Both the position numbers and the translations under genes were made by a program. Below are positions 35,450 to 56,330 of a DNA stretch of 64,000 bases, one piece after another. Numbering within the stretch: the first letter of the stretch is position 1; every line of letters starts with the position of its first letter. The stretch is from the IMG/VR virus record IMGVR_UViG_3300032116_014939, positions 124,001-188,000 of that record. One strand, written 5' to 3'. The notes beneath the pieces are model-generated. The model did not search any database, was not told the DNA's origin, and was given only the letters and a program-made list of their open reading frames with translations.

Positions 35450-35453
35450 AATT

Positions 35454-36792: not shown

Positions 36793-38007
36793 ATGAAAGA
36801 AAAAATTAAAGTTTTAGTTATCCCTTCTGACACTACAGGTGTTGGAAGATTTAGGTCAATCACTCCTCATACTCATTTACAATCAAAATACGGTGAAGAT
36901 TTTCATGTTGATATTGAATTCAACCCTGATTTGACTAATATAAATTATTTTAAGGATTATCAAATAATTCACTATCACCGTTCTCTTGGTCAAGATATGG
37001 ATAAGTCAGTACAAATAGTACCGATTCTTAATTCTTTGGGCATTATTACTATCTGTGATTTAGATGATTACTGGTTACCTGGCAAAGAACATCCTCTTCA
37101 TCAGTTGATTGTACAAGAAAAAATACATGAAAAAATTATTGCAAATTTAAAAGTTGCTCAATATGTAACTACAACAACTGAGTTATTTGCGGATGAAATA
37201 CGTAAATACAATAAAAATGTTGTAATTTTTCCAAATGCAATTGACCAAAATGAAGCTCAATTTAAAGAACCTACTGAAGAATCTGATTTAGTTAGAATTG
37301 GTTGGTTAGGTGGTTCATCTCACTTACATGATTTAAAACTTCTTGACGGTATGGTTTCAAAACTATCAGACATACAAAAAAATCTTCAATTTGTTGTTTG
37401 TGGTTTTGACACACGTGGTATGATGACAGAAATTAATCAGGCAACTGGAGAACAAACAAGAAGACCAATTAAACCACACGAAACTGTATGGTATGATTAC
37501 GAAAAGATTTTTACAAACAATTACTCAATTGTTACACCTGAATATAAAAAACATTTAGAACTTTTTGTTCAAACACCTTACGAAAATGAACAAAACCAAC
37601 CATACAGAAGAGTTTGGACAAAACCTGTTACATCTTATGCTCGTAATTATTCAAAATTTGACATATCTTTGGCACCAATTAAACAACATATGTTTAACAA
37701 AGTAAAATCACAACTTAAAGTTATTGAAGCAGGTTTTTATAAAAAAGCATTAATCGCCAGTAACTATGGGCCATATACTATTGATTTAAAACACGCAATG
37801 AAAAATGGTGAATTTACTGATGGTAACGCTCTTTTAGTTGATGACGCAAGAAATCATAGTGATTGGGCTAAATATGTTAAAAAATTGGTTCAAAACCCAA
37901 ATATGAGAATTGACATGGGTGAAAGATTATATGAATATGTTTCACAAAGATATAGTTTAGATGTAGTAACAAAAACAAGAGCAGAATTTTATAAATCAAT
38001 CGTATGA
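36793..38007 (+). CDS. Glycosyltransferase, GT-B fold (GT4-like)
   Basis: GVGRFR, DLDDYW, IFPNAID, RIGWLGGSSH, DISLAP...KSQLKVIEAG..ALIASNYGPY. Confidence 0.85.
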   Translation: MKEKIKVLVIPSDTTGVGRFRSITPHTHLQSKYGEDFHVDIEFNPDLTNINYFKDYQIIHYHRSLGQDMDKSVQIVPILNSLGIITICDLDDYWLPGKEHPLHQLIVQEKIHEKIIANLKVAQYVTTTTELFADEIRKYNKNVVIFPNAIDQNEAQFKEPTEESDLVRIGWLGGSSHLHDLKLLDGMVSKLSDIQKNLQFVVCGFDTRGMMTEINQATGEQTRRPIKPHETVWYDYEKIFTNNYSIVTPEYKKHLELFVQTPYENEQNQPYRRVWTKPVTSYARNYSKFDISLAPIKQHMFNKVKSQLKVIEAGFYKKALIASNYGPYTIDLKHAMKNGEFTDGNALLVDDARNHSDWAKYVKKLVQNPNMRIDMGERLYEYVSQRYSLDVVTKTRAEFYKSIV

Positions 38008-38702
38008 TAAAACACCCATTACACAAAATTTTATTTATTGACATTGAAACTGTCGGGGTTTCAAGTAACTATGAAAATTTTAAAAAGGATTATCCTGAAC
38101 TTCATTTCCAATTTATCAATTATTTAGATTGGTTTCAAAAAAGGTTTCCTGAAGACGCTGAAAAAAGTATTGATGAAATTTTTGTTAATCGTGCGGCTTT
38201 AGTTCCTGAGTTCTCAAAGATTGTTTGTGTTTCAGTAGGATTTCTTGACCCAAAGGGTGACATTAAAAAACAAAGTTTTTTTAACTCAGATGAAAAAGTA
38301 TTACTTACAGATGTAAACACATTGTTAAATCGAGTTGATAAGTTAGGTTTTATCCTTTGTGGACATAATCTTAAAAACTTTGATATTCCTGTATTGGCAA
38401 AAAGAATGTTAGTTAATGGTATTTTACCATCATCTATCCTTCCATCTTACGATACTAAACCTTGGGAGATTAAAGCAATTGATACAAAAGAAATTTGGCA
38501 ATATGGACAATTTGGAGCAATAAGTTCATTAGAACTAATGTGTGTATCTCTTGGTGTTGAGACTTCTAAAAATATGGAAGTCACGGGAAATAAAGTTCAC
38601 AACGCATTTTGGAATAAAAACAAATACCAAGAAATCCAAGATTATTGTGAGAAAGATGTTGAAGTACTAATTAAAGTTTTAATAAAATTAACAAATTTAT
38701 GA
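38004..38702 (+). CDS. Stand-alone PolB-type 3'-5' exonuclease (DEDD)
   Basis: FIDIET, GHNLKNFDIP, IDT, YCEKDV. Confidence 0.85.
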   Translation: MIKHPLHKILFIDIETVGVSSNYENFKKDYPELHFQFINYLDWFQKRFPEDAEKSIDEIFVNRAALVPEFSKIVCVSVGFLDPKGDIKKQSFFNSDEKVLLTDVNTLLNRVDKLGFILCGHNLKNFDIPVLAKRMLVNGILPSSILPSYDTKPWEIKAIDTKEIWQYGQFGAISSLELMCVSLGVETSKNMEVTGNKVHNAFWNKNKYQEIQDYCEKDVEVLIKVLIKLTNL

Positions 38703-39283
38703 GTGAAAAATTTAATTTTGCAAGAGAATTAGAAGAATTAAAAAAATTGGTTGATGACTTTAGTCAATTACAGGAACAAGAATTAAATGATGAATTAGGG
38801 TTCGATATTAAGGAATTTGAGGATGCAAATCAATTTATTGGGGATGGAAAAATTACAATAAATTTTGTTTCAACGAATGAAAAAGAATTGAATTACGCGT
38901 ACGAATCAGACAGTGGATTTGATTTATACGCAAATGAAGAAGTTAAAATACCTGCATTTGGTAGGGCTTTAGTTCCAACAGGTGTTTCAGTTGATTTACC
39001 CCAAGACTTTGAGATACAAGTTAGGTCAAAGAGCGGTTTAGCCATCAATCAAGGGTTAATGGTTTTAAACTCCCCAGGAACTGTAGATGAAGGTTATACT
39101 GGTGAAATTAAAGCCATTATTTTTAATACAAACAACCATGAATTTGTGATAACAAAAGGTATGAAAGTCGCTCAAGCGGTAGTTGCAAGATGTATTACAG
39201 GTAGATGGGTTAATTTGAAAAAAGTAGATAAAATAGAAGAAAAAGATAGAGGTAGTAAAGGTTTTGGGAGTACAGGGATATGA
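38699..39283 (+). CDS. dut: Trimeric dUTPase
   Basis: DSGFDL, KSGLA, GTVDEGYTGEI, VAQ, RGSKGFGSTG. Confidence 0.92.
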   Translation: MSEKFNFARELEELKKLVDDFSQLQEQELNDELGFDIKEFEDANQFIGDGKITINFVSTNEKELNYAYESDSGFDLYANEEVKIPAFGRALVPTGVSVDLPQDFEIQVRSKSGLAINQGLMVLNSPGTVDEGYTGEIKAIIFNTNNHEFVITKGMKVAQAVVARCITGRWVNLKKVDKIEEKDRGSKGFGSTGI

Positions 39284-40785
39284 TAACAATAATATACTCA
39301 ACACATAAAGACGAAAATTATAATAAAAAATTTAAACAACATTTATTAGAAAGTGTTGATTTGAAAAATGTTCAAATATTAGAATACCAAAACAATAATC
39401 AATATTCGTTGGCTCAAATTTATAATAGTGGAATAACAGAATCAAATTATGATATTGTTGTTTGTTGTCATAATGATATTAAATTAGAAAAAGGATGGGG
39501 TAAAAAATTATTAAGAGATTTTGAAGAAAATCTTGATTTTGGTATTTTAGGTAAGGCTGGTTCATGTTATTTTCCTAAATCAGGTGTTTATTGGGAAAAT
39601 ATGCACAATACAATGGTCGGTCATGTGTATCACCAACCTGAAGGTCAACCAAAGTGGATTAGTAAATACTCGGCCAAATTACCTAAACCAATACCAGTTG
39701 TCACATTAGACGGATTATTTTTATCGTTTAATAAAAATAAAATAAAACACACATTTGATGAAACTATTGGTAAATTTCATTTTTATGACCACCCGTTTTG
39801 TTTGAGTAATTTTTTGGATGGTGTTAAATTAGGGGTAACTTTTTCATTCGATATTACACACCAATCTGTTGGTCAACCAAACCATGAATTTTATAATAGT
39901 AAAATTACATTTTTAGAAAAATACGGACAATTTTTGCCTATTGTAATTTATCCCGAAATTTATATCCCAAGAATACAAAGAAAACCAATAAAAATTGATG
40001 GTAAAGTTGCAATTATTATCCCACATAAAGATAATTTTTCTTTATTAAAAAAATGTATTTTATCTTATTTTGATAATTGTGATGAAACTATTTTTGATAT
40101 TTTTGTTGCGGATACGGGTTCTTCTAAACTTGAAAAAAAAGCTATTAAAAATTTTATATTTAATTATTCAAATATAAAGTTGATTGAATATGATTATTAT
40201 AATTTTGCAAAAATTAATAATGATGTAGTTAAAAATCATTTATTTAACGAACATACGTACATTTTATTTAGTAACAATGATATTGAACTTTTAAATGATG
40301 TGATTTATGGTATGTTAAAAATACATAAGACTATTCCCGCAGTTGGTACTGTTGGTTGTAGATTACATTTTAAAAATAAATTAATCCAACATGATGGAGT
40401 AATCATTGTAAGTGATAAAGAAAATAAAATTCAAATGCACCATAGTGGTATTAATTCTCATTATAACTTTCAAAATCAAATAAAAAAAGTACCAATCACT
40501 ACAGGTGCTCTTATGATGGTATATAGAAAGGTTTTTGAAAAATTAAATTATTTTAATGAATCATATACTGAATGTTTTGAAGATGTTGAATTTAATTTAA
40601 AATGTTTGATAAATGGATATACTAATTATTTAGATGGTAATTTAGTATCATATCACTATGAAAGTCAAACAAGAAATTTAAATTATGATAAAAATGAAAG
40701 AGTGATTGAAGATTATAAAAAAACATTATCGCCTTTTATTTCAAACAATTTTAATAAATTACAAAAATTTATATTATCAATCTAA
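39280..40785 (+). CDS. Two-domain GT-A (GT2-like) glycosyltransferase
   Basis: Domain 1 CCHND...TLDGLFL...FHFYD; domain 2 IIIPHKD...VADTGS...YNFAKINN...FSNNDI...TGALMM...FEDVEF. Confidence 0.85.
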   Translation: MITIIYSTHKDENYNKKFKQHLLESVDLKNVQILEYQNNNQYSLAQIYNSGITESNYDIVVCCHNDIKLEKGWGKKLLRDFEENLDFGILGKAGSCYFPKSGVYWENMHNTMVGHVYHQPEGQPKWISKYSAKLPKPIPVVTLDGLFLSFNKNKIKHTFDETIGKFHFYDHPFCLSNFLDGVKLGVTFSFDITHQSVGQPNHEFYNSKITFLEKYGQFLPIVIYPEIYIPRIQRKPIKIDGKVAIIIPHKDNFSLLKKCILSYFDNCDETIFDIFVADTGSSKLEKKAIKNFIFNYSNIKLIEYDYYNFAKINNDVVKNHLFNEHTYILFSNNDIELLNDVIYGMLKIHKTIPAVGTVGCRLHFKNKLIQHDGVIIVSDKENKIQMHHSGINSHYNFQNQIKKVPITTGALMMVYRKVFEKLNYFNESYTECFEDVEFNLKCLINGYTNYLDGNLVSYHYESQTRNLNYDKNERVIEDYKKTLSPFISNNFNKLQKFILSI

Positions 40786-41672
40786 TGGAAGAGAAAAAAT
40801 TAAAAATTTTATTTGGGTGTCTTTTATACCGAGACTTCACAGGTTCTGAAATGTATGTATTTGAACTTTGTAAAAATTTAGTTAAAAACGGACATGATGT
40901 TAGTGTAGTTTCACCTTCAATAGAAGGTCCAATAAGATACCTATCAGAATCATTAGGAATTAAAGTTTACGATTTCAACAATGCCCCTGTTCATGAAAAT
41001 TTTGATATAATACACGGACAACATTATCCTGTTGTTGAAATTTTGGTACACGCATTCCCAAACACACCAATAATTACAACAATTCATTCTGAAGTTATTG
41101 AATTAGAAAATCCAGTAATTTCTCCAAATATTAAAAAATACATCTGTATAAGACCTGAAATTAAACAACATATTATTAATAATTTTAAAATTGATATTAA
41201 TTCAACTACAATTATTTATAACCCAATAGATGAATCAAGATTTAATCAAAACAATACTGAAAATTCTAACTCAGTACTTTTTGTCGGTACTATAGATTAT
41301 TTACGTAAAAATTCAATTTTTGATATTTCAGATTATTGTGAAAAAAACAATAAAGAACTTTGGTTAGTTGGTAAAAACCACTCAAATTATTTGAATGAAC
41401 TAACAACTAAACCACATGTTAAATACTTTAGTGAAACAAGTTCTGTTGAGGAGTTCACAAAAAAATGTGGTGAAACTGCGGGTATATTATTGGGTAGAAC
41501 AACTATTGAAGGATGGATGTGTGGCAAAAAGGGTTGGATTTATAATATCAATAGTAATGGGAATATTATTGATAAAAAATTACACGATGTCCCTGAAAAT
41601 ATTGGTCAATTTGAATCGTCAAATGTTTGTAAAGAAATAACAAACGAATATATTAAAATATTAAATCAATGA
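40785..41672 (+). CDS. Glycosyltransferase, GT-B fold (GT4-like)
   Basis: FTGSEMYVFEL, DIIHGQH, IYNPID, LFVG, GRTTIEGWMCG. Confidence 0.8.
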   Translation: MEEKKLKILFGCLLYRDFTGSEMYVFELCKNLVKNGHDVSVVSPSIEGPIRYLSESLGIKVYDFNNAPVHENFDIIHGQHYPVVEILVHAFPNTPIITTIHSEVIELENPVISPNIKKYICIRPEIKQHIINNFKIDINSTTIIYNPIDESRFNQNNTENSNSVLFVGTIDYLRKNSIFDISDYCEKNNKELWLVGKNHSNYLNELTTKPHVKYFSETSSVEEFTKKCGETAGILLGRTTIEGWMCGKKGWIYNINSNGNIIDKKLHDVPENIGQFESSNVCKEITNEYIKILNQ

Positions 41673-42727
41673 AAAAAACAATCATAACTATCACCGGTAT
41701 TAGACCCGATTTTATAAGAATGTCTGAAATTTTTAAAAAATTAGATAACAATTTTAATCATATATTAATACACACAGGACAACATTATGATAAAATGTTA
41801 TCTGATGTATTTTTTGATGAGTTATCAATACGTAAACCTGATTTTAATTTAGAAATCGGCTCAAAGGGAAAAGAACATTTTCACCAACAGGCAGATTTAT
41901 CTGTCAAAATAATTGACTTAATCCGTAATGAAAATATAAATCCTGATTTAATAATTTTTTTAGGTGATTCAAATTCGGCTTTAGCATCGGTACCTCTTAA
42001 AAAAGAGGGGTATAAAATTGCCCACATTGAGGCAGGTATGAGGTCGGGTGATAAAAGAATGCTTGAAGAAATTAATAGAATTGTTTGTGACCATTGTAGT
42101 GACCTTTTGTTTGTTTATCATGATAATTACAAAGAAAAATTGATTAGAGAATCAATTAATCCAAAATCAATTTATGTTGTAGGAAATACAATTAAAGAGG
42201 TTGCAAATAAAATAGAATTAAATAAATCTAAAAAAAATAATAAAATAATTTTAGATATTCATAGACCTGAAAATTTTAATAGTAAGGAACGTTTAAAAAA
42301 CATATTAAACTATGCTAATATTTGTTCCCAAAGATTTGGGATACCTGTTGAAATGTTATCATTTAAAAGAACTATTGATAAAATATCCGAATTTAATTTA
42401 GATTTAGAAAATATTAAAGTAATTGATTTATTATCTTTTAAAAATTATATAAATGAAATGTACCATTCTAAGTTTATAATTTCAGATTCAGGTACAGCTC
42501 AAGAAGAACCTTGTTTATTTAATACTCCAGTTATTGTCCCAAGAGATTTTACTGAAAGACCTGAATCGGTTGAATCTGGATGTTCATATATGATTAATGT
42601 AAACGAATTAGATGTTTCGTGGATTGAGTCATTTAATTATCTATCAAATTATAACTCAAACACAGATTGGTTAGGAGATGGTAAAACATCCGACAAAATT
42701 ATTGAAATATTAAAAGAAAAATTATGA
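41669..42727 (+). CDS. wecB: UDP-N-acetylglucosamine 2-epimerase (non-hydrolysing; WecB/FnlC family)
   Basis: GIRPD, HTGQHY, HIEAGMRS, HRPEN, SDSG..QEE, RDFTERPE. Confidence 0.9.
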   Translation: MKKTIITITGIRPDFIRMSEIFKKLDNNFNHILIHTGQHYDKMLSDVFFDELSIRKPDFNLEIGSKGKEHFHQQADLSVKIIDLIRNENINPDLIIFLGDSNSALASVPLKKEGYKIAHIEAGMRSGDKRMLEEINRIVCDHCSDLLFVYHDNYKEKLIRESINPKSIYVVGNTIKEVANKIELNKSKKNNKIILDIHRPENFNSKERLKNILNYANICSQRFGIPVEMLSFKRTIDKISEFNLDLENIKVIDLLSFKNYINEMYHSKFIISDSGTAQEEPCLFNTPVIVPRDFTERPESVESGCSYMINVNELDVSWIESFNYLSNYNSNTDWLGDGKTSDKIIEILKEKL

Positions 42728-43533
42728 TTTCCATTGTTACTGCGTATCACAATCGAAAAAAAATATTTATTAAAACATTAGAAAGTTTTAAAAAAAGTAG
42801 TTTTACTGATTTTGAAGTTATCGCTGTCGATGACTGTAGTCACGAAGATGAAAGATTAGAAGATTTGGTAGACGAATTTCCTTTTTTAAAAATTGTTAGA
42901 TTAGAAAAAAAAGATAAATGGTATGTAAATCCATGTGTTCCTTTTAACGTCGGATTTAACCACGCATCAGGTGATAAAATTATTATACAAAATCCTGAAT
43001 GTTTACATTCAGATGATATTTTAAATTTTGTAAACGAAAATTTAATTGATAATGATTATTTATCATTTGCTTGTTATTCTTTAAGTGAAATTCAAACATC
43101 GGCAGTGTTACAACTTAATGATTTTAAATCATTTATTAACCCCTCAACATATAAAAAAATATCAGTAGTTAATGATGGTGATGAAGGATGGTATAATCAT
43201 TCATTATATCGACCAAAATCTTATCATTTTTGTACCGCAATAACTAAAAAAGATTTAAAAGAATTAGGAGGATTTGACGAAAGATTTGCAACTGGAGTAG
43301 CGTTTGATGATGATGAATTTATACATAGAATTCGTCTTAAATTAAATGTAAGGTTTATTGATGATTTTGTTGCTCTTCATTTATGGCATTACGGAAATGA
43401 TAAAAATGCAACAGTAACAAATAGAGTAAATATGGATAATAAATTTTGGGAAATGTGGAATAAAAATAATTACTTATTCAATTATGTGACTAAAATTGAA
43501 AATAAATACACAATTAATAATTTAATTAAATGA
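42724..43533 (+). CDS. GT2 glycosyltransferase
   Basis: ISIVTAYHNR, IAVDDCS, GGFDERF...DDDEF. Confidence 0.85.
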   Translation: MISIVTAYHNRKKIFIKTLESFKKSSFTDFEVIAVDDCSHEDERLEDLVDEFPFLKIVRLEKKDKWYVNPCVPFNVGFNHASGDKIIIQNPECLHSDDILNFVNENLIDNDYLSFACYSLSEIQTSAVLQLNDFKSFINPSTYKKISVVNDGDEGWYNHSLYRPKSYHFCTAITKKDLKELGGFDERFATGVAFDDDEFIHRIRLKLNVRFIDDFVALHLWHYGNDKNATVTNRVNMDNKFWEMWNKNNYLFNYVTKIENKYTINNLIK

Positions 43534-45033: not shown

Positions 45034-45057
45034 AATATTAAAGATATACAAAATAAA

Positions 45058-45992: not shown

Positions 45993-45996
45993 TCTT

Positions 45997-46605: not shown

Positions 46606-46614
46606 AAATAAAAT

Positions 46615-47586: not shown

Positions 47587-47594
47587 AACATACT

Positions 47595-48518: not shown

Positions 48519-48525
48519 TACATAT

Positions 48526-49350: not shown

Positions 49351-49415
49351 GATGAATAAAAACAACACTTAATGTTTACTGTATCCATATTTTTTATTAA
49401 TTTAAAATAAAAAAT

Positions 49416-49949: not shown

Positions 49950-49972
49950 TAAAAAAATAAATTAAAATTACC

Positions 49973-50626
49973 ATGAATAAAGAATATACTATAATTATAC
50001 CAAGCAATAGAGACTCTTTAAAAGATGAATTAATTACTCATTTAAAAAACATGGATGAAGAATCAATTTGGAAAAATGGTCACGGATACCCATCTTTCTC
50101 AAAATTAATTAATGATTGTGTTGTTGAATCACCAACAGAAACCATTATTATTTGTAATGACAAAGCTAGACCTAAAAAAGAACATATTGAAAAAATTTTA
50201 ACTCTTTTAGAACAAGGATATGGGTTTGTTGGATTATATGCGTGGGGGTTTTTTGGTTTTAAAAAAGAATTATTTAGAAATATTGGGTTTATGGATGAAA
50301 GATTTATTGGGGGTAATTATGAAGATAGTGATTACCTAAGAAGAATGATGGAGGGCAATATTGCCATGTATAATTCATTTGAAATAGATTATATCTCTAT
50401 GAGTTCAGGATGGAACATATCAAATACAAAAAACCATTTTGATAAAAAATGGGAGCATGGTGATTTACCAGGTGATAAATATGTAAAACGATTATTACCA
50501 GAAGAAACTTATGATTATAACATAGGTGAAAAAACAAACATAAAATTTCTACCATGGTCTGATTCATTTTTTAGTATTGACGTAGGTAAATCAGAAACAT
50601 TCATGGATTACAAAATAAAAATATAA
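49973..50626 (+). CDS. GT-A-like glycosyltransferase (short)
   Basis: IIIPSNR, IGFMDERFIGGNYEDSDY. Confidence 0.7.
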   Translation: MNKEYTIIIPSNRDSLKDELITHLKNMDEESIWKNGHGYPSFSKLINDCVVESPTETIIICNDKARPKKEHIEKILTLLEQGYGFVGLYAWGFFGFKKELFRNIGFMDERFIGGNYEDSDYLRRMMEGNIAMYNSFEIDYISMSSGWNISNTKNHFDKKWEHGDLPGDKYVKRLLPEETYDYNIGEKTNIKFLPWSDSFFSIDVGKSETFMDYKIKI

Positions 50627-50648
50627 AATAAATAAATTATATAAAATA

Positions 50649-51623
50649 ATGAAAGAAAAAGTTTTATTAGTAGGTGGTGCCGGTTACATCGGAGGATTAA
50701 CATCAGATTATCTTATTAGAGAAGGGTTTGATATAACTATTTACGATAATTTATTATATGAAAATAGGTATTTAAAAGATGTTTCTTTTATTTATGGAGA
50801 CATTAGAGATACTGATAAACTTTATGAAGTATCTAAAGATTTTGATATTATAGTTTTAATGGCTGCTTTAGTTGGTGACCCGGCTTGTAGTGTTGACCCA
50901 TTTTTAACTGAAGAAATTAATTATAATTCTATTAAAAATTTTTGTGATATTGTTTCACCCGATAAACATTTAATTTTCATGTCTACGTGTTCAGTTTACG
51001 GGGCTCAAGATGGTATATTAGATGAATTAAGTGAAACAAATCCATTATCATCATATGCATCAACAAAACTTAAAGCCGAAAAACACATTTTAGACAAAAA
51101 TGGGACAATTTTTAGATTAGGAACTGTATTTGGTCTTGGTGACACATATTCTAGAATTAGAATGGATTTAGTTGTTAATGTATTAACTATGAAGGCGGTA
51201 AAAGAAGGTACTATAACTATTAATGGAGGTGAACAATGGAGACCAATAATAGCAGTTAAAGATATTGCGGGATATATTACAGAGGCCTGTAAAGAAAAGT
51301 ATCCGGGAATTTTTGTTTTATCAAAAGAAAATGTTATAATTAAAGAACTAGGTGAACGTGTTGCTAAAATAGTACCTAATACTAAAGTAACGTACACTGA
51401 AATATCTTTTCAAGATGCTAGAAATTATCGTGTTGATAATTCAAAATCTTTAAAAGTTTTTAAATATAAACCAATTACAACCGTTGAGGATGAGGTATTA
51501 AGAATGGTAACTTTATTTGAAGAAAATAGAATTGAAAACCCTGAAGATAAAGTTTACCACAATGGAGCGTTTTTAACAAATAAAAAAAATCAAAAAGAAT
51601 TATTATGGACACAAAAAAATTAA
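50649..51623 (+). CDS. NAD-dependent nucleotide-sugar epimerase/dehydratase (extended SDR)
   Basis: GGAGYIG, STCSVYG, YASTK, RLGTVFG. Confidence 0.9.
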   Translation: MKEKVLLVGGAGYIGGLTSDYLIREGFDITIYDNLLYENRYLKDVSFIYGDIRDTDKLYEVSKDFDIIVLMAALVGDPACSVDPFLTEEINYNSIKNFCDIVSPDKHLIFMSTCSVYGAQDGILDELSETNPLSSYASTKLKAEKHILDKNGTIFRLGTVFGLGDTYSRIRMDLVVNVLTMKAVKEGTITINGGEQWRPIIAVKDIAGYITEACKEKYPGIFVLSKENVIIKELGERVAKIVPNTKVTYTEISFQDARNYRVDNSKSLKVFKYKPITTVEDEVLRMVTLFEENRIENPEDKVYHNGAFLTNKKNQKELLWTQKN

Positions 51624-52024
51624 TGAATGGTGGTATCTCTGTTGATGATAGAGGTTCGGTTAGATTTGTTAATGATTTCAATTTTGAAAATGTAAAGAGA
51701 TTTTACCAAGTTGAGAATCATAGACAAGGATTTATAAGAGCGTGGCATGGTCATAAAAAAGAAGGGAAATATGTTTATGTATCTAGTGGTACCGCACTTA
51801 TTGGAATTGTTAATATGGAAACTGAAGAAATTACAAAATATATTTTAAGTGCAAGACAACCAAAAGTATTATTTATCCCACCGAATCATTATAATGGTTT
51901 TAAAAATTTGGAAGAAAATACTTCAGTTATTTTCTTTTCTACTACATCATTAGAAGAAAGTTTAGGTGACGATATAAGATTACCACATGATAATTGGAAT
52001 ATATGGGAAGAAGATTTTAGATAA
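51605..52024 (+). CDS. rmlC: dTDP-4-dehydrorhamnose 3,5-epimerase-like cupin
   Basis: DDRG, IRAWHGH, LFIPP..YNGF. Confidence 0.75.
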   Translation: MDTKKLMNGGISVDDRGSVRFVNDFNFENVKRFYQVENHRQGFIRAWHGHKKEGKYVYVSSGTALIGIVNMETEEITKYILSARQPKVLFIPPNHYNGFKNLEENTSVIFFSTTSLEESLGDDIRLPHDNWNIWEEDFR

Positions 52025-52049
52025 AAAAAATAAAAAAAGTAAAAAAATT

Positions 52050-52874
52050 ATGAAAATTTATATTTTAGGTTCAAAAGGTATGTTAGGTAAATATGTTTAC
52101 ACTTATTTATCTGAAAAATTTAATGTTAATGAAATTAACAGAGATGTTCTTGACGCATCTCAACAGACAGAAAAAACATTAGAAGAAATTTTAATCAATT
52201 GTGGAGTAAATCAGGGTGATGTTATTATAAATTGTATTGGTACAATTAAACCAAGAGTTGACCAATTAGGTGACTTAAACGCAATTTTAGTAAACTCAGT
52301 TTTTCCAAGATTATTAGCTAATGTTTGTGAGAAAAATGAATGGAATATGATTCATCCAACAACTGATTGTGTCTTTTCAGGTAAAAAAGGTAGATATGAT
52401 GAAAAAGATAAATATGATGTTGATGATGTATATGGTATGTCTAAAGCTATGGGAGAACCAAGTAATTGTACAATAATAAGAACTTCAATAATTGGTGAAG
52501 AAGTTAATCAACATAGGTCTTTAGTTGAATGGGTTAAAAGTCAAAAAAATAATACAGTTAATGGTTTTTTAAATCATTTTTGGAATGGTATTACTTGTTT
52601 AGAATGGGCTAAATTAGTGGAAAAAATTATTGATAACAAAGATTTTTGGAAAGGGATTAAACATTTTGTTTCACCAACTCAAGTTACAAAATACGATTTA
52701 GTAAAAATGATATCAAATTCATATGAATTAAATATTGGTATTAACGCCATGAATTCAGAATTAACTGTTGATAGAACTTTATCGACTATTTTTGATACAA
52801 AATATGATATACCTGAGTTGGAATTTCAAATAAATGAAATGCAATCATTCTCAAAAAAGTTACACAAAAATTAA
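52050..52874 (+). CDS. rmlD: dTDP-4-dehydrorhamnose reductase-like; start moved to ATG 52050
   Basis: GSKGMLG, TTDCVFSG, YGMSK, RTSIIG. Confidence 0.85.
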   Translation: MKIYILGSKGMLGKYVYTYLSEKFNVNEINRDVLDASQQTEKTLEEILINCGVNQGDVIINCIGTIKPRVDQLGDLNAILVNSVFPRLLANVCEKNEWNMIHPTTDCVFSGKKGRYDEKDKYDVDDVYGMSKAMGEPSNCTIIRTSIIGEEVNQHRSLVEWVKSQKNNTVNGFLNHFWNGITCLEWAKLVEKIIDNKDFWKGIKHFVSPTQVTKYDLVKMISNSYELNIGINAMNSELTVDRTLSTIFDTKYDIPELEFQINEMQSFSKKLHKN

Positions 52875-52877
52875 ATA

Positions 52878-53618
52878 ATGACAAGAAAAAAAACAATTAG
52901 CAAAGACAGTCAGTATATTCCTACTGAAGCTAAACCAAAAATGTCGAAAAAAGACCAAATTAGTGGGATGATTAAAAAGAGTAAAGATAAATTCTTAACT
53001 CAAAGTCAGAGAGAGTACTATGATAAATTGAAGAAAAATCAAATAACAATTTGTTCAGGTCCGGCAGGTGTTGGTAAAAGTTTTATAGCAATGAAAGCAG
53101 CGGTTGATTTAATTGCCGACCATACGTCACCTTACGAAAAAATTATCATTGTTAGACCAGCGGTTGAAGCTGAAGAAAAACTTGGTTCATTACCTGGTAA
53201 TGTTGAAGAAAAATTAGACCCGTATATCTTCCCATCATATTATCTATTAAATAAAATTATAGGTAAAGAGGCGAGAGAAAAATTAAAACAAATGGAAGTT
53301 ATTGAGGTTTTCGCATTGGCATATATGAGAGGGATGAATATTGATAATTCTATTTTAATATTTGAAGAAGCTCAAAATGCTACGCCAAAACAAATGAAGT
53401 TATTATTAACTCGTATTGGTACCGATAGCAAATTTTTTATATCAGGTGATTTAGAACAAACTGACAGATATAAAGATAAAAAACATTCAGGTTTATGGGA
53501 TGCTATTGAGAAATTTAAAAACATTTCAGAGATTGGAGTTCATGAATTTGGAGATGATGATGTTGTTAGAAATCCATTAATTACTGAAATATTAAAAAGG
53601 TATGAAGATAGGAATTGA
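52878..53618 (+). CDS. phoH: PhoH-family ATPase
   Basis: GPAGVGKS, RPAVE, LGSLPG, YMRG, EEAQN, GDLEQ.D, VVRNPL. Confidence 0.95.
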   Translation: MTRKKTISKDSQYIPTEAKPKMSKKDQISGMIKKSKDKFLTQSQREYYDKLKKNQITICSGPAGVGKSFIAMKAAVDLIADHTSPYEKIIIVRPAVEAEEKLGSLPGNVEEKLDPYIFPSYYLLNKIIGKEAREKLKQMEVIEVFALAYMRGMNIDNSILIFEEAQNATPKQMKLLLTRIGTDSKFFISGDLEQTDRYKDKKHSGLWDAIEKFKNISEIGVHEFGDDDVVRNPLITEILKRYEDRN

Positions 53619-54228
53619 TATTAACGGAGTTTTAAGGGATACTATTGGTAAGTTTAAAACAACCTATAATAAATTTCTAATTGAAAAAAGTGACGGGTTT
53701 GAGGAAGATGAGGTGTCGTTTAACTATGAGATAATTGAACCAATTGATAGTTTAGATTTATCCAAACATTTTTTATTTCCTTCAAAAGAAGAAATGTTTT
53801 CATTCATGTTTGAAGAATGTCCTATGGAAATATTTGGTCATTCACCATCAAGTGAAATGACAACATTTGTGGATTTCAACGACATATATGTTAAACACAG
53901 AGATAATATTCAGTTCACTATTATATCAGATGAAATTTCAAAATCAAAACCCGCAACTTTATTTTTTTTATCAAAATTTGGTTGTTTGGTTGAAAGAATT
54001 ATTTTCTATAATGAAGTAACAAAAAAAGAAGTTTTAAATGAATTTGATTTAATAGTTACTTCTAACCCTGAAATTATTATTAATTACAATAATAAAGTTG
54101 TTAAATATAAAACACTTTATAATGAAAAAATAAACTCGTCTAAAACTATTGAAAAGTTAAAGGAATTAGACGAAATAATCTCAAATATTACAGATGTTAA
54201 AAATACTAGGGGAACATTACTATATTGA
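53602..54228 (+). CDS. 5'(3')-deoxyribonucleotidase-like HAD protein
   Basis: MKIGIDINGVLRD motif I. Confidence 0.65.
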   Translation: MKIGIDINGVLRDTIGKFKTTYNKFLIEKSDGFEEDEVSFNYEIIEPIDSLDLSKHFLFPSKEEMFSFMFEECPMEIFGHSPSSEMTTFVDFNDIYVKHRDNIQFTIISDEISKSKPATLFFLSKFGCLVERIIFYNEVTKKEVLNEFDLIVTSNPEIIINYNNKVVKYKTLYNEKINSSKTIEKLKELDEIISNITDVKNTRGTLLY

Positions 54229-54457
54229 TTTGGAGTCTGCTCAATCAATTATTAATATAGACACACCAAACTCATCAGGTTCAACTGAACAACAGATAGG
54301 TGTGGTTCAATACGAAATAATTAAAATGATGCTAGAGGTAGTCTTGAGTGAAACTGAAGAAGTTGATGAAACTTTAGGAGATAAAGCATCAGCATCAATA
54401 CCATTTAAATTGGCATTTAACACTTTATTAAATAATAAAATAATTCAAAAATACTAA
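54194..54457 (+). CDS. Hypothetical protein
   Basis: Coupled ORF inside the operon. Confidence 0.7.
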   Translation: MLKILGEHYYIDLESAQSIINIDTPNSSGSTEQQIGVVQYEIIKMMLEVVLSETEEVDETLGDKASASIPFKLAFNTLLNNKIIQKY

Positions 54458-54460
54458 AAC

Positions 54461-55519
54461 ATGGAAGAAACAATTAAAAAAATTGAAGATTCAATTAAAA
54501 ATTTGAGTGAAAAAAAATCAAGAATTTATTTTTTCGCTCAAGATACTTTAGGGAACGCTAAAGCGTCAATCAAATACATTTATGATATGGCATTAACACT
54601 TAAAAATGCCGGTTATAATGTCATTATTTTACATGAAAAACCTAATTATTTTGGAGTACAAAGTTGGTTAGGAAATAAATATGATTCTATTCCCCACCAA
54701 TCAGTAGAAGGACAAAATTTACAAATAGCGCCTGAAGATTTTATGATTATTCCTGAAATTTTTGGTTACGTTATGAGTCAATTAACAAACTTACCTTGTA
54801 CTAAAATCGTATTGTCACAGTCTTATGACTATATATTTGAAACTCTTCAACCAGGACAAACTTGGCAACAATTTAACTTTACAAAGTGTATCACAACTTC
54901 AGAAGAGCAAAAAAATTATGTTTCAAAATTAATGAGAATGAGTGCTGTTGACGTTATTGAACCAGTAATCGATGAGAATTTTGTTGTTTCTGAAAAACCT
55001 GTTAAACCAATTATTTCGGTTGTGTTTAGAGAACAAAGAGATTCAATTAATTTTATCAAGTCGTTCTATCAAAAGTATCCACAATTTAGATGGATTACTT
55101 TCCGTGATTTAAGAGGTTTATCTCAAGAAGAATTTGCAAGTTCATTAAGAGAATCTATGTTGTCAGTATGGAACGATAGAATTAGTTCTTTTGGTACCTT
55201 CCCATTAGAATCTATGAAGAGTGGTGTAGCAGTTATGGGTGTAGTTCCAAAACTAATTCCAAGTTGGTTAAGCGAAGAAAACGGAATTTGGATACAAGAT
55301 GAAATAAAACTTGTAGACTATGTTGCAGATTTTGTTCAAAATTGGTTAGAAGATAATGTTTCTGAAAATCTTTACAAGAATGGTATTGAAACTTCGGAAA
55401 AATATAGTGATGTAGAAAAATTTGAAAAGACAATTTTATCAACGTTTGAAGGTTATCTTCAAGTTATAAAAGAAAATTTTGAAACTGAATTAAATAAACT
55501 ACAATTAATTGAAAATTAA
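54461..55519 (+). CDS. Glycosyltransferase, GT-B-like
   Basis: IIPEIF, VLSQ, FGTFPLESMKSG acceptor/donor loop. Confidence 0.7.
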   Translation: MEETIKKIEDSIKNLSEKKSRIYFFAQDTLGNAKASIKYIYDMALTLKNAGYNVIILHEKPNYFGVQSWLGNKYDSIPHQSVEGQNLQIAPEDFMIIPEIFGYVMSQLTNLPCTKIVLSQSYDYIFETLQPGQTWQQFNFTKCITTSEEQKNYVSKLMRMSAVDVIEPVIDENFVVSEKPVKPIISVVFREQRDSINFIKSFYQKYPQFRWITFRDLRGLSQEEFASSLRESMLSVWNDRISSFGTFPLESMKSGVAVMGVVPKLIPSWLSEENGIWIQDEIKLVDYVADFVQNWLEDNVSENLYKNGIETSEKYSDVEKFEKTILSTFEGYLQVIKENFETELNKLQLIEN

Positions 55520-55523
55520 TATT

Positions 55524-56330
55524 ATGGAAAATATTTTAGATTTAAGTGTTATATTACCTATTAAAAGTATGGTAATGAGAGATTTTGAGGATTTCTTTAA
55601 AAAATCAATTGAGTCTGTACAATCTCAAGAGTTCTTACCAAAAAACTTAATTATAGTTCATGGTAAAGATAAAAATTTATCGGATTATTTGAAAAAATAT
55701 GATTTTCAAAATCTTAAAGTAACAACTTTTGAATTTGATGGAGAACCAAATTTTTCAAATCAGGTTAATTTTGGAATTACAAAAGCTGAAACTAAATGGG
55801 TTAGTATTCTAGAAGTTGACGATGAATACTCAAAAATTTGGTTTAAAAATGTAAAAAAATATTTAGATTCATATTCTGATGTTGACGCATTTTTACCTAT
55901 CGTAGTTGAGGTAGATAATAAATTAACCTTCCAAGGATTTACAAACGAAGCTACATTTGCGGCTAATTTCTCACAAGAAATGGGATATCTAACAAATGAA
56001 ACTTTATTACAATATCAAAATTTTCAAACATCAGGAATGGTATTCAAAAAATCTCTAATTGAAGATTTTGGTGGATTTAAACCAAGCATTAAATTAACAT
56101 TTGTTTATGAATTGTTACTTCGTTTAACGTACAATTCGGCTAAAATTATGACTATTCCTAAAATTGGTTACAAACACACTAATTTAAGAGAAGGTTCTAT
56201 TTTTTGGGAATACAAAAATGGTGAAACCAAACTTGAAGAAAATGAGGTTAAGTTTTGGGTATCTTCAGCTAAAAAAGAATATTTTTTTAGTGAAGACAGA
56301 AACATAAAATTTGTTCCTGAAAATGCTTAA
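55524..56330 (+). CDS. GT2 glycosyltransferase
   Basis: LSVILP, QVNFGI, ILEVDDEY, GGFKPS, YKHTN. Confidence 0.8.
   Translation: MENILDLSVILPIKSMVMRDFEDFFKKSIESVQSQEFLPKNLIIVHGKDKNLSDYLKKYDFQNLKVTTFEFDGEPNFSNQVNFGITKAETKWVSILEVDDEYSKIWFKNVKKYLDSYSDVDAFLPIVVEVDNKLTFQGFTNEATFAANFSQEMGYLTNETLLQYQNFQTSGMVFKKSLIEDFGGFKPSIKLTFVYELLLRLTYNSAKIMTIPKIGYKHTNLREGSIFWEYKNGETKLEENEVKFWVSSAKKEYFFSEDRNIKFVPENA

What the first reader, a model, noticed from the sequence alone, without database searches (positions are those of the whole stretch)
36793..56330. Phage-encoded, fully soluble glycosylation pathway (~11 GTs plus nucleotide-sugar synthesis)
Seen: a co-directional, tightly coupled ~20 kb operon with about 11 GT-A/GT-B glycosyltransferases, WecB, Gmd, a DegT aminotransferase, acetyltransferase, methyltransferase, two cupins, an SDR epimerase and RmlD. 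There is no flippase, Wzy, ABC exporter or undecaprenyl-phosphate priming transferase, and I see no obvious transmembrane protein. Established: O-antigen and capsule loci need such membrane components; giant eukaryotic viruses use similar soluble sets to glycosylate virion fibrils. Inference: the acceptor is cytoplasmic, most plausibly virion proteins (PT stalk, [ST]GxT motifs), giving a glycan coat. Alternatives are DNA hypermodification (dut, exonuclease and nucleotidase are interleaved) or rerouting of host surface glycans. The operon lacks a TATTTAT promoter at its start, so it is probably pre-late.
Basis: partly seen in the sequence, partly recalled or inferred. Interest (0 to 1): 0.85.

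Follow-up and report, generated by a model that had tools for sequence, protein, structure and literature searches.

The report
Variable sugar-coat gene island in jumbo phage
An abundant, uncultured freshwater jumbo phage carries four conserved sugar-adding enzymes plus a fast-swapping 12 kb cassette of sugar-building genes with no membrane or export parts, so it probably builds a strain-specific glycan inside the cell, most likely on its own particles, though the target is unproven.

Summary
Window 36793-57067 is one co-directional, tightly packed, pre-late operon. It has 11 glycosyltransferase-like proteins, WecB, Gmd, a mini DegT, an acetyltransferase, a methyltransferase, two cupins and two SDR enzymes. 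None has a predicted transmembrane segment.

The operon is composite. Twelve genes are conserved in order across the IMG/VR relatives examined: GT-B 404 aa, exonuclease, dUTPase, double GT-A 501 aa, PhoH, NT5C nucleotidase, an 87-aa ORF, Agt-like GT-B, GT2, a gp55-like late sigma, and 120- and 640-aa ORFs.

The 16 genes at 40785-52874 fill a hypervariable slot next to the double GT-A. In relatives this slot ranges from 32 bp to more than 10 kb, with 146 protein clusters among 302 ORFs. All recognised functions are glycan-related and none is polytopic. Strains 97-99% identical in DNA differ by whole cassettes.

About 170 kb of the roughly 242 kb genome shows no flippase, polymerase, exporter or priming transferase. 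It holds a canonical thymidylate synthase and no hydroxymethylase or TET.

The phage matches the recently described "moraphages". Cytoplasmic glycosylation of virion proteins is the best-supported reading (about 0.45). Host-glycan remodelling and DNA glycosylation remain possible.

The parts
36724..36740 (+). Terminator-like hairpin followed by T9. It separates the upstream late unit (34167-36701) from the operon.
   Evidence: sequence read
36793..38007 (+). Core GT-B glycosyltransferase, 404 aa, retaining GT4-like fold
   Evidence: Weak Pfam GT1 hit. phrog_7162 at 1e-45. AF2 pLDDT 78.6. Top Foldseek hits are GlgM, MshA, HepE, PglA and BshA; no T4 alpha- or beta-GT in the top 50. Conserved at 60-69% in the IMG/VR relatives aligned. 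At least 7992 homologue clusters in the protein database.
38004..38702 (+). Core 3'-5' exonuclease (DNA_pol_B_exo2-like). A backbone gene, not part of the glycan pathway.
38699..39283 (+). Core dUTPase, a backbone gene. In relatives a second variable slot (slot A) lies between it and the next gene.
39280..40785 (+). Core bifunctional glycosyltransferase, 501 aa, with two GT-A domains. It is the anchor of both variable slots.
   Evidence: Pfam Glyco_tranf_2_5 plus Glycos_transf_2. Profile hit to K4 chondroitin polymerase at 4e-8. AF2 pLDDT 82.4. Foldseek hits: K4CP, heparosan synthase 2, ppGalNAc-Ts, Mimivirus R699. Present in 80 of 80 loci.
40785..52874 (+). Strain-specific glycan cassette of 16 genes filling hypervariable slot B
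   Evidence: All 16 genes together occur only in the five 100%-identical IMG/VR contigs; relatives share at most a few cassette genes. Slot B measures 32 bp to more than 10 kb in relatives. The same cassette is assembled independently in at least 24 contigs.
40785..41672 (+). GT4-like glycosyltransferase, 295 aa
   Evidence: Pfam Glyco_transf_4 at 3e-14
41669..42727 (+). UDP-GlcNAc 2-epimerase (WecB-like), giving UDP-ManNAc
   Evidence: Pfam at 4.5e-67. TIGR00236 scores 206.6 bits, just under the 210 cut-off.
42724..43533 (+). GT2 glycosyltransferase
43530..44324 (+). GT2_4-like glycosyltransferase (weak support)
   Evidence: Pfam at 1e-4, below the gathering score
44308..45033 (+). GT2-like protein
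   Evidence: No Pfam hit. Atlas feature score 0.99 with 211 shared features to viral GT2 clusters.
45058..45468 (+). WbuC-like cupin
   Evidence: TIGR04366 at 2.9e-9, below cut-off
45465..45992 (+). Hexapeptide-repeat sugar N-acetyltransferase-like protein (NeuD/PglB/VioB-like C-terminus)
45997..46605 (+). Mini DegT-like PLP protein, 202 aa against about 370 in canonical members. It keeps the SFxxxK Schiff-base lysine motif; its activity is uncertain.
   Evidence: Homologues at about 30% identity in 28 loci.
46615..47586 (+). GDP-mannose 4,6-dehydratase (Gmd)
   Evidence: Pfam at 7e-112. TIGR01472 scores 380 bits against a 415 cut-off.
47595..48518 (+). GT1-like GT-B C-terminal domain (weak support)
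48502..49350 (+). Fucosyltransferase-superfamily-like protein, a candidate GDP-6-deoxyhexose transferase
   Evidence: 181 homologue representatives. Profile A7 hits POFUT2 at 2.3e-4 and POFUT1 at 1.8e-3.
49416..49949 (+). SAM-dependent methyltransferase (Methyltransf_24)
49973..50626 (+). Unassigned 217-aa protein, possibly GT-A
   Evidence: Only a Glyco_tranf_2_2 hit at E 0.009
50649..51623 (+). SDR nucleotide-sugar C4-oxidoreductase or dehydratase
   Evidence: Pfam Epimerase. Full-length hit to PDB 6vo6 at 1.9e-42.
51605..52024 (+). RmlC/FdtA-like cupin, a sugar 3,5-epimerase or ketoisomerase
51987..52874 (+). RmlD-like 4-ketoreductase
52878..53618 (+). Core PhoH, a backbone gene and the right border of slot B
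53602..54228 (+). Core NT5C-type deoxyribonucleotidase, a backbone gene
   Evidence: Atlas scores 0.93-0.98 with NT5C clusters. Conserved.
54194..54457 (+). Core 87-aa ORF of unknown function; overlaps the preceding gene by 35 nt
   Evidence: No Pfam or PHROG hit. Hits in 53 of 80 loci at a median 53% identity, and kept in order in empty-slot-B relatives.
54461..55519 (+). Core GT-B glycosyltransferase, 352 aa, related to the Actinobacillus Agt/AmGGT family
   Evidence: Profile A2 hits PDB 8xsg at E 8.6e-14; generic GT1/GT4 entries score 0.25 or worse. 8XSG is AmGGT per PMC12159676.
55509..56330 (+). Core GT2 glycosyltransferase, 273 aa
56330..57067 (+). gp55-like late sigma factor, the last gene of the operon
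   Evidence: phrog_234 'late sigma transcription factor' at E 0.003. Conserved family A4. The late motif follows at 57084-57091.
31195..34119 (-). Late 974-aa Cys-rich protein with a PT-rich mucin-like linker of about 150 aa (residues ~715-860). It is a candidate glycan acceptor; this is inference only.
   Evidence: TATTTAT lies 8 nt upstream of its start. Homologues in relatives keep PT or poly-T linkers.

Best explanation
Shown: the locus is a pre-late operon of a T4-like freshwater jumbo phage. The conserved backbone encodes four soluble glycosyltransferases: a GT4-like GT-B, a two-domain GT-A, an Agt-like GT-B and a GT2. Backbone nucleotide-metabolism genes and the late sigma factor are interleaved with them.

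Shown: hypervariable slots flank the two-domain GT-A, and cassettes of glycan-tailoring genes are swapped in and out of them. In this strain slot B holds 16 genes.

Inferred from the gene families, with no enzyme assayed: these 16 genes supply three nucleotide-sugar branches.
- UDP-ManNAc, through WecB.
- A GDP-4-keto-6-deoxymannose branch. Gmd makes the keto-sugar. The mini-DegT, acetyltransferase and cupin would convert it to an aminated, N-acetylated 6-deoxyhexose. A fucosyltransferase-like GT would transfer it.
- A C4-oxidation, epimerisation and C4-reduction branch (SDR, cupin, RmlD-like) giving another deoxy or epimerised hexose. It is probably fed by the RmlA encoded elsewhere in the genome.
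The cassette also holds six or seven further GTs and an O-methyltransferase.

Inferred: the four core GTs lay down a conserved core glycan from host UDP-sugars. The cassette enzymes extend and decorate it into a strain-specific oligosaccharide. Everything happens in the cytoplasm on an acceptor that never crosses the membrane.

Inferred: the most likely acceptors are Ser/Thr-rich surface regions of virion proteins made shortly afterwards from late promoters. One candidate is the PT-linker protein encoded next door. The result would be a variable glycan coat on the particle.
For: - Composite architecture and hypervariability.
- Island contents across the family are almost only GTs, sugar O-methyltransferases, acetyltransferases, aminotransferases and SDR, Gmd or epimerase enzymes.
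- No polytopic membrane protein among 302 island ORFs or among the window ORFs from 34167 to 63643 that were scanned.
- No Wzx, Wzy, ABC exporter, Bac_transf or WecA family in about 106 kb downstream and 10 kb upstream of the window.
- Relatives with an empty slot B keep all four core GTs.
- The core 352-aa GT is specifically related to AmGGT/Agt, whose relative ApAgt elongates glucose on cytoplasmically glycosylated adhesins (PMC12159676).
- The C-terminal GT-A domain of the 501-aa protein superposes on polypeptide GalNAc-transferases and on the Mimivirus collagen glucosyltransferase R699.
- A late protein with a 150-aa PT linker lies adjacent, and such linkers are conserved in relatives.
- Pre-late timing is supported by the motif positions and the sigma gene.
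- Precedents: mycobacteriophage virion glycosylation, as cited in PMC12619734, and giant-virus soluble glycosylation machineries, from my own knowledge.
Against: - No glycan has been observed. This is an uncultured phage.
- The GT folds are generic. The same 501-aa protein matches K4 chondroitin polymerase and heparosan synthase best, and those act on lipid-linked acceptors destined for export.
- GT4 neighbours include enzymes that act on lipids and on small molecules.
- PT linkers are common unglycosylated spacers.
- Soluble GTs are also the norm in O-antigen loci, so absence of transmembrane segments in the GTs themselves is weak evidence.
- About 30% of the genome was not inspected.
Confidence: 0.45

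Rival explanations
1. Host envelope remodelling, the classical 'phage LPS genes' idea. The soluble phage GTs and nucleotide-sugar enzymes act at the inner face of the membrane on host undecaprenyl- or lipid-linked intermediates. They rely on the host's own priming transferase, flippase or ABC exporter and ligase. This would change the O-antigen or capsule of the infected cell, for example to block superinfection or grazing, or it would sabotage host envelope synthesis.
For: - The best profile and fold matches of the core 501-aa GT are capsule polymerases (K4CP, PmHS2) that elongate lipid-anchored chains.
- Weak NCBIfam hits of the cassette GTs are to EPS, teichuronic-acid and colanic-acid GTs.
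- GT4 neighbours include PglA, PimA and HepE.
- Similar clusters in cyanomyoviruses (P-SSM2, S-SCSM1, S-SCSM2R with 13 GTs) are conventionally read this way (PMC12801897).
Against: - Not one of 44 distinct islands (302 ORFs) carries a flippase, polymerase, exporter or priming transferase, although bacterial loci of this content almost always do.
- None was seen in about 170 kb of the genome.
- Cassette turnover between 97-99% identical strains would repeatedly have to stay compatible with host export specificity.
- The phage is T4-like and lytic in its gene content. No integrase was seen in the parts read.
Confidence: 0.25
2. DNA hypermodification. Some or all of the conserved GTs glycosylate a hydroxylated pyrimidine in phage DNA, as in T-even, RB69 and DLP3 phages. 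The cassettes diversify the DNA glycan in an arms race with host nucleases.
For: - The core GTs are interleaved with dUTPase, exonuclease, NT5C nucleotidase and PhoH in a pre-late operon.
- A GT sits directly upstream of the gp55-like sigma, as alpha-gt does in T4 (my own recollection of the T4 map).
- Phages are now known to make their own nucleotide sugars and to add up to three sugars to DNA bases (PMC13326640; bioRxiv 10.1101/2023.12.21.572611).
Against: - The only thymidylate-synthase homologue found passes the equivalog cut-offs for a true ThyA (340.6 bits against 325) and keeps the dUMP-specifying Asn in PFNIASY.
- No hydroxymethylase, 5mYOX/TET or JBP family appears in about 170 kb.
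- The phage encodes its own EcoO109I-like nuclease with an N6/N4 methyltransferase. That pairing suggests protection by methylation rather than by bulk hypermodification.
- GT404 resembles GT4 enzymes, not T4 alpha- or beta-GT.
- Eleven GTs plus O-methylation and N-acetylation far exceed any known DNA glycan.
Confidence: 0.12
3. A free cytoplasmic product. The enzymes would make a soluble methylated oligo- or polysaccharide or a glycosylated small molecule. That product would act inside the infected cell, by analogy with the cytoplasmic polymethylated polysaccharides of mycobacteria, which need no exporter.
For: - The islands are unusually rich in FkbM, CmcI and other O-methyltransferases.
- Foldseek neighbours of GT404 include the methylmannose-polysaccharide mannosyltransferase, GlgM, and the MshA and BshA small-molecule GTs.
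- Every part is soluble.
Against: - No obvious selective reason for strain-level hypervariability of an internal product.
- No lipid-carrier or acyl-transfer genes typical of those pathways were seen.
- No precedent in phages.
Confidence: 0.08

Closest known systems
Moraphages (freshwater jumbo phage lineage; Perez-Hernandez et al. 2025, PMC12619734)
   Same: - Freshwater metagenomic origin, and contigs of 240-318 kb in the family.
- T4-like structural module.
- Shared gene content: dUTPase, PhoH, sigma factor, ClpA-like ATPase, a DnaJ-like Zn-finger protein (faint Pfam hit), a LysRS-like tRNA-synt_2 protein and glutamine synthetase.
- Four conserved GT families, as in their core orthogroups.
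- The nearest GenBank relatives are LR7565xx huge phages.
   Different: Membership is inferred from gene content only, because their sequences are not in the tools. The paper notes four GT orthogroups and unspecified variable 'genomic islands' as future work. It does not describe the glycan cassette slots, their contents or the absence of export genes.
Cell-wall / 'LPS' gene clusters of large cyanomyoviruses (P-SSM2, S-SCSM1, S-SCSM2R; PMC12801897)
   Same: - T4-like phages with a dozen or more GTs together with nucleotide-sugar epimerases and RmlC-like enzymes.
- Function unproven.
- Gene content varies between phages.
   Different: Those clusters include KdsA, KdsB and a PgaA export-protein homologue and are read as host-surface genes. 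Here there are no Kdo or export genes. The variable genes also sit in fixed slots next to a conserved two-domain GT, inside a conserved pre-late operon.
Mycobacteriophage virion glycosylation (Freeman et al. 2023, cited in PMC12619734 and PMC12801897)
   Same: Phage-encoded soluble GTs would modify virion proteins in the cytoplasm. This is the only demonstrated case in tailed phages.
   Different: Those systems have 2-4 GTs next to the structural genes and use host nucleotide sugars. Here there are 11 GTs, three sugar-nucleotide branches and cassette hypervariability. No sequence homology to the actinophage GTs was tested. Only a Gordonia phage GT appears, as a fold neighbour.
Giant-virus autonomous glycosylation machineries (chlorovirus capsid glycans, Mimivirus fibril clusters; my own knowledge, plus R699 in PMC9546862 and PMC12279948)
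   Same: - Soluble virus-encoded GTs.
- Gmd, an aminotransferase, an N-acetyltransferase and rhamnose-type enzymes.
- Clade-specific gene clusters giving clade-specific glycans on the particle.
- The two-domain GT-A is a fold neighbour of R699.
   Different: This is a bacterial virus with a different gene order. There is no homology beyond the fold and family level, and the acceptor is unknown.
T-even, RB69 and DLP3 DNA glycosylation (PMC13326640; Pyle et al. preprint 10.1101/2023.12.21.572611)
   Same: Early-expressed soluble GTs among nucleotide-metabolism genes. In RB69 and DLP3 the phage also makes its own nucleotide sugar.
   Different: No hydroxylated-pyrimidine synthase was found, and the ThyA is canonical. 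The GT folds are not AGT- or BGT-like in the top hits. The enzyme set is far larger.
Bacterial O-antigen and capsule loci
   Same: The same enzyme families (WecB, Gmd, DegT, hexapeptide acetyltransferase, RmlC/RmlD-like, GT2/GT4) and the same cassette-like diversity at a fixed locus.
   Different: Every membrane step is missing: the priming phosphoglycosyl transferase, Wzx or ABC exporter, Wzy and Wzz, and the ligase.

Membership tests
Wzx/Wzy- or ABC-dependent O-antigen/capsule locus | Nucleotide-sugar synthesis genes plus several glycosyltransferases clustered together | tested here: met
Wzx/Wzy- or ABC-dependent O-antigen/capsule locus | Initiating polyprenyl-phosphate glycosyl-1-phosphate transferase (WecA or WbaP type, polytopic) | tested here: not met
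   No protein with more than two hydrophobic 19-mers in the scanned window ORFs (34167-63643) or in 302 island ORFs. No such Pfam family among the operon and flanking ORFs scanned here, nor in the precomputed Pfam lists for about 116 kb beyond the window. About 30% of the genome is unseen.
Wzx/Wzy- or ABC-dependent O-antigen/capsule locus | Flippase or ABC exporter, polymerase, chain-length regulator | tested here: not met
T-even-type DNA glycosylation | Enzyme that creates a hydroxylated pyrimidine: a dCMP/dUMP hydroxymethylase or 5hoC synthase (ThyA homologue with altered specificity), or a methyltransferase plus TET/5mYOX | tested here: not met
   The single ThyA homologue is canonical: NF002496 scores 340.6 against a 325 cut-off, and the Asn in PFNIASY is retained. 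No TET or JBP family in about 170 kb. The remaining ~70 kb was not inspected.
T-even-type DNA glycosylation | GT of the T4 alpha-GT or beta-GT type | tested here: not met
   The top 50 Foldseek hits of the GT404 model are GT4-type enzymes and include no T4 AGT or BGT. The other core GTs were not modelled, except the 501-aa GT-A protein.
Mycobacteriophage-type virion glycosylation | Phage-encoded soluble GTs with no export machinery | tested here: met
Mycobacteriophage-type virion glycosylation | Glycans demonstrated on capsid or tail proteins | not testable with these tools
   Needs particles, and the phage is uncultured. Only candidate Ser/Thr/Pro-rich acceptor regions are seen.
Giant-virus-like autonomous glycosylation machinery | Virus-encoded nucleotide-sugar pathway (Gmd, aminotransferase, N-acetyltransferase, epimerase/reductase) plus soluble GTs, varying by clade | tested here: met
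   This is similarity of kind, not homology of the locus.
Moraphage lineage (PMC12619734) | Aquatic jumbo phage of 200-307 kb with the core set: dUTPase, PhoH, sigma, ClpA, LysRS-like protein, T4-like structural genes, four GT orthogroups. Many members also have glutamine synthetase and DnaJ/DnaK. | tested here: inconclusive
   All listed genes are found in this phage.
dTDP-L-rhamnose pathway (RmlABCD) | RmlA, RmlB, RmlC and RmlD all present as equivalogs | tested here: inconclusive
   RmlA is a true equivalog but lies elsewhere in the genome (TIGR01207, 443 bits against a 360 cut-off). The cupin and the reductase in the cassette are far below the RmlC and RmlD cut-offs. The SDR is closest to PDB 6vo6, not to RmlB.

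The most novel reading that the evidence does not exclude
An abundant freshwater jumbo-phage lineage carries a phage 'serotype locus'. A conserved four-GT core is joined by rapidly exchanged, exporter-free cassettes. Together they build strain-specific, O-antigen-like glycans directly on virion proteins such as mucin-like PT/poly-T linkers. Phage particles would then have glycan serotypes under diversifying selection.
Probability: 0.4. Interest if true: 0.8.

Novelty: new variant of a known kind. Interest (0 to 1): 0.62.

Why it matters
Large phages of aquatic bacteria often carry "LPS-like" gene sets whose target has never been shown. This locus gives that question a sharper form.

- **Conserved core.** The GT core is kept in the IMG/VR relatives examined, and its 404-aa GT has thousands of homologue clusters in public sequence data.
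- **Fixed hot spot.** The variable genes are confined to slots beside one anchor gene.
- **Recent turnover.** Near-identical strains differ only by cassette.
- **No export step.** None was found in any of 44 island variants.

This pattern is what diversifying selection on an exposed glycan would produce. It points to a cytoplasmic acceptor.

If the acceptor is the virion, phage particles in lakes would carry variable sugar coats. That would bear on adsorption, grazing and aggregation, and on how viral "species" are delimited. It would also extend virion glycosylation from actinophages and giant viruses to T4-like phages.

The cassettes are in addition a compact source of soluble GTs, sugar methyltransferases and a minimal DegT-like protein.

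Tried and rejected
- **Closest phage by DNA.** Megablast of the region against GenBank phages found nothing. tblastn of the 974-aa PT-linker protein also found nothing.
- **Single-sequence PDB searches.** The 404- and 501-aa GTs gave no useful hit. Family profiles and AF2 models were needed.
- **Host or donor inference from Gmd.** A GTDB genome scan gave top hits of 63-77% on short "MAG" contigs that are probably misbinned phage. All other hits were 55% or lower with no consistent taxon, so no host call is made.
- **tRNAs.** None in the window.
- **Promoter and terminator scans.** The sigma-70-type scan is uninformative in this AT-rich DNA: 133 sites found against 133 expected. T4's TATAAATA motif is not enriched overall. 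Only its position next to late gene starts, as TATTTATA on the coding strand, is informative.
- **Island junctions.** I looked for repeats or att-like sequences and found only seamless replacement, with a few retained bases.
- **The 640-aa protein (57457-59379).** I tested whether it could be an HMW1C/NGT-like protein N-glycosyltransferase. It has no Pfam or PHROG support, atlas hits are only viral hypotheticals, and it lies behind a late motif, so the idea was dropped.
- **A broken DegT gene.** I rejected this reading because the 202-aa form is conserved in 28 loci and keeps the lysine motif.
- **PDB 6vo6.** I could not verify from the literature tools that it is C. jejuni Cj1427. That identification is my recollection only.
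- **Freeman et al. 2023.** The paper could not be opened.

Full report
**What is in the window**

The window is AT-rich, about 29% G+C. It encodes a T4-like myovirus:
- a 1062-aa tail sheath, a family-B DNA polymerase and a UvsW-like helicase;
- just outside the window, a Gp23-type capsid protein, an S77 prohead protease, a T4-type portal and a large terminase;
- gp32, a DnaB-like helicase and ribonucleotide reductase.

It has no close relative among GenBank phages. Its sheath and its 404-aa GT find LR7565xx "huge phages" at 31-34% identity.

It is 100% identical over the query gene to five IMG/VR contigs, one of 242 kb. It belongs to a very large uncultured family:
- more than 600 sheath homologues at 60-82% identity, on contigs up to 318 kb;
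- at least 7992 clusters of the 404-aa GT in the protein database.

The same phage with the same cassette was assembled independently in at least 24 contigs, so the locus is not a chimera.

**Checking the observation**

From 36793 to 57067 there are 25 + strand ORFs, with gaps of -38 to +65 bp.

They also confirm the dUTPase, a PolB-exo-like exonuclease and PhoH. The "nucleotidase" is the NT5C-type protein at 53602.

GT status was established for eleven proteins at different strengths:
- Clear Pfam hits: 39280 (two GT-A domains), 40785, 42724 and 55509.
- Weak Pfam hits: 36793, 43530, 47595 and 49973.
- An AF2 model of 36793 (pLDDT 78.6) is a retaining GT4-like GT-B.
- A family profile of 54461 hits PDB 8xsg at E 8.6e-14.
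- 44308 is GT2-like by the protein atlas.
- 48502 has 181 homologue representatives. Their profile hits protein O-fucosyltransferases weakly, which marks it as fucosyltransferase-superfamily-like.

No ORF in the operon has a hydrophobic 19-mer above 1.6.

**The locus is a conserved backbone plus a cassette**

I compared all window proteins with 80 related IMG/VR loci by tblastn. Twelve genes are conserved in the same order at 30-78% identity:
- GT404, the exonuclease, the dUTPase and the double GT-A;
- PhoH, NT5C and an 87-aa ORF;
- GT352, GT2-273 and a 245-aa protein;
- 120- and 640-aa proteins.

The 16 genes between the double GT-A and PhoH (40785-52874) occur as a set only in the identical contigs. 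Only fragments of the set, such as the cupin, acetyltransferase, mini-DegT and Gmd module in L043 and L056, recur elsewhere.

In relatives the distance between the double GT-A and PhoH runs from 32 bp to 9.5 kb, and beyond 10 kb in some. There are 44 distinct configurations among the 80 loci.

The 302 ORFs in these islands fall into 146 clusters, 95 of them singletons. Pfam scans of 133 cluster representatives return almost only glycan chemistry:
- GT2, GT4, GT11, GT47 and GT92;
- FkbM, CmcI and other methyltransferases;
- Gmd, SDR epimerases and reductases, DegT;
- hexapeptide and GNAT acetyltransferases;
- UDP-glucose dehydrogenase, WbqC, a cytidylyltransferase and WecB.

None of the 302 ORFs is polytopic.

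A second slot lies between the dUTPase and the double GT-A. It is empty in the window. In relatives whose slot B is empty it holds methyltransferases and GT2s. Every relative examined in this way therefore has the four core GTs plus some tailoring genes.

L010 and L019 are 97-99% identical in flanking DNA. L010 has slot B filled and slot A empty; L019 is the reverse. The replacement is clean, down to a few retained bases. Cassette turnover is therefore fast relative to point substitution.

**Timing**

A terminator-like hairpin with a T9 tail precedes the operon.

The motif TATTTAT(A) lies 4-25 nt upstream of the starts of structural genes on both strands. Examples are at 13917, 15968, 17487, 18389 and 21679 (minus strand), at 25297, 26815, 34146, 57084 and 61146 (plus strand), and at 34127 for the PT-linker protein. 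It is absent at 36793.

The last gene of the operon (56330-57067) weakly matches the T4 gp55 late-sigma PHROG and is highly conserved. An operon that encodes the late sigma must be expressed before late genes.

**Sugar chemistry (inferred from gene families, not assayed)**

- **UDP-ManNAc branch.** WecB would give UDP-ManNAc.
- **GDP branch.**
  - Gmd gives GDP-4-keto-6-deoxymannose.
  - The adjacent WbuC-like cupin, hexapeptide acetyltransferase and DegT-like protein resemble a perosamine-type amination and N-acetylation branch.
  - The DegT-like protein is only 202 aa. It lacks the C-terminal domain and about 40 internal residues, though it keeps the SFxxxK lysine motif and is conserved in 28 loci. 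Its activity is uncertain.
  - The fucosyltransferase-like 48502 downstream is a plausible transferase for a GDP-6-deoxyhexose.
- **Oxidation, epimerisation and reduction branch.**
  - The last three genes form a C4-oxidation, epimerisation and C4-reduction trio.
  - The SDR matches PDB 6vo6 over its full length at 1.9e-42.
  - The cupin is RmlC/FdtA-like and the reductase is RmlD-like.
  - A true RmlA (443 bits against a 360 cut-off) and a second RmlC-like fragment lie elsewhere in the genome.

**Looking for what would refute a cytoplasmic acceptor**

I walked along a 132.7 kb contig of the same phage using the precomputed Pfam annotations. This covered about 106 kb downstream and 10 kb upstream of the window. 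With the window, that is roughly 170 of 242 kb.

Not found: a flippase, polymerase, ABC exporter or priming transferase.

Found:
- a thymidylate-synthase homologue, which is canonical: it is above the equivalog cut-offs and the dUMP-specifying Asn is retained;
- no TET, JBP or hydroxymethylase family;
- an EcoO109I-like nuclease with an N6/N4 methyltransferase.

These results weaken both rivals but do not eliminate them.

**What the conserved GTs resemble**

- **GT404** is a generic retaining GT4 (GlgM, MshA, HepE, PglA, BshA, TarM, SdgB). T4 alpha- and beta-GT are not among its top 50 hits.
- **The double GT-A** matches the two-domain polymerases K4CP and PmHS2 best. It also matches polypeptide GalNAc-transferases, Mimivirus R699 (a collagen glucosyltransferase) and LH3.
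- **GT352** is specifically closer to AmGGT (8XSG) than to generic GT4 enzymes. AmGGT's relative ApAgt elongates glucose on adhesins that a cytoplasmic N-glycosyltransferase has primed (PMC12159676).

This mix is compatible with protein glycosylation but does not prove it.

**Candidate acceptors**

The divergently transcribed late gene 31195-34119 encodes a 974-aa Cys-rich protein. It has a PT-rich linker of about 150 aa and 13 [ST]GxT motifs where about 2 are expected. Homologues in relatives keep PT or poly-T linkers. The tail sheath also has a Thr-rich insertion. These are leads only.

**Relation to what is known**

Gene content matches the "moraphages" described in 2025. Those are freshwater jumbo phages of 200-307 kb with dUTPase, PhoH, sigma, ClpA, a LysRS-like VOG, glutamine synthetase, DnaJ and four core GT orthogroups. 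That paper lists the GTs without resolving their role and flags unexplored variable islands.

Comparable "cell-wall gene" sets exist in large cyanomyoviruses, with up to 13 GTs. Virion glycosylation is demonstrated in mycobacteriophages. DNA polyglycosylation with phage-made nucleotide sugars is demonstrated in RB69 and DLP3.

The new elements here are:
- the fixed two-slot cassette architecture around a conserved two-domain GT;
- its rapid turnover;
- the family-wide absence of any export step.

**Verdict**

The feature is real and well defined. It is a conserved four-GT core with a hypervariable, exporter-free glycan cassette in a pre-late operon of an abundant freshwater jumbo phage.

My estimates for the target are:
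- virion proteins glycosylated in the cytoplasm, about 0.45;
- host-envelope remodelling through host carriers, about 0.25;
- DNA glycosylation, about 0.12;
- a free cytoplasmic glycan, about 0.08.

The remainder is unassigned.

Noticed in passing
window 25309-26814 (+): A 501-aa protein has an N-terminal half that is a complete Fe/Mn superoxide dismutase (Sod_Fe_N plus Sod_Fe_C). It is fused to an unassigned C-terminal half and sits behind a late-type TATTTATA motif, so it may be a virion-associated SOD.
   Followed up: no
window 56330-57067 (+), and motif sites such as 13917, 15968, 18389, 25297, 26815, 34127, 34146, 57084, 61146: A gp55-like late sigma gene closes the operon. A TATTTAT(A) motif lies 4-25 nt upstream of structural gene starts on both strands. 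It is probably the late promoter of this lineage and resembles the complement of T4's TATAAATA.
   Followed up: partly
L040 6253-9970; L019 8269-9994: A second hypervariable slot lies between the dUTPase and the double GT-A. It is filled with methyltransferases and GT2s in relatives whose main slot is empty, and it is empty in the window.
   Followed up: yes
L027 and L028, about 7464-8687: The homologue of the conserved 404-aa GT carries an in-frame TAA at codon 18, inside a 4-residue insertion in the Gly-rich N-terminal motif. This occurs in two contigs from different samples. It could be a pseudogene or an alternative start.
   Followed up: partly
L250 1-899 / L251 9328-10870 (same phage, JGI Ga0315900_10000115): The phage encodes an EcoO109I-family restriction endonuclease next to an N6/N4 DNA methyltransferase, a complete type II R-M pair in a lytic-type jumbo phage.
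   Followed up: no
L254 1-2476 and 5522-5971: There are PAS-domain histidine kinases (528 and 440 aa), a response regulator and a cREC_REC protein, which together look like a phage-borne two-component system.
   Followed up: no
L253 4856-5971, 7263-8129, 8982-10001; L252 4695-5702; L249 6503-8290: Other auxiliary genes lie elsewhere in the genome:
- a canonical ThyA with a ~37-aa insert;
- a bona fide RmlA far from the glycan cassette;
- glutamine synthetase;
- adenylosuccinate synthetase;
- a PPK2-lysozyme fusion protein.
   Followed up: partly
window 18452-21643 (-): The tail sheath is unusually long (1062 aa). It has N-terminal insertions that include a Thr-rich stretch (21 S/T/P in a 40-residue window starting at residue 123). 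Only the C-terminal ~330 aa match sheath families.
   Followed up: no
L165, L166, L167 (GTDB genome contigs): Contigs binned as Gammaproteobacteria or Altibacter MAGs carry Gmd at 63-77% identity to the phage gene. They are probably misbinned phage contigs of this lineage.
   Followed up: no
window 45997-46605 (+): A conserved minimal DegT-like family of about 200 aa keeps the PLP-lysine motif but lacks the C-terminal domain. It recurs in 28 related islands.
   Followed up: partly
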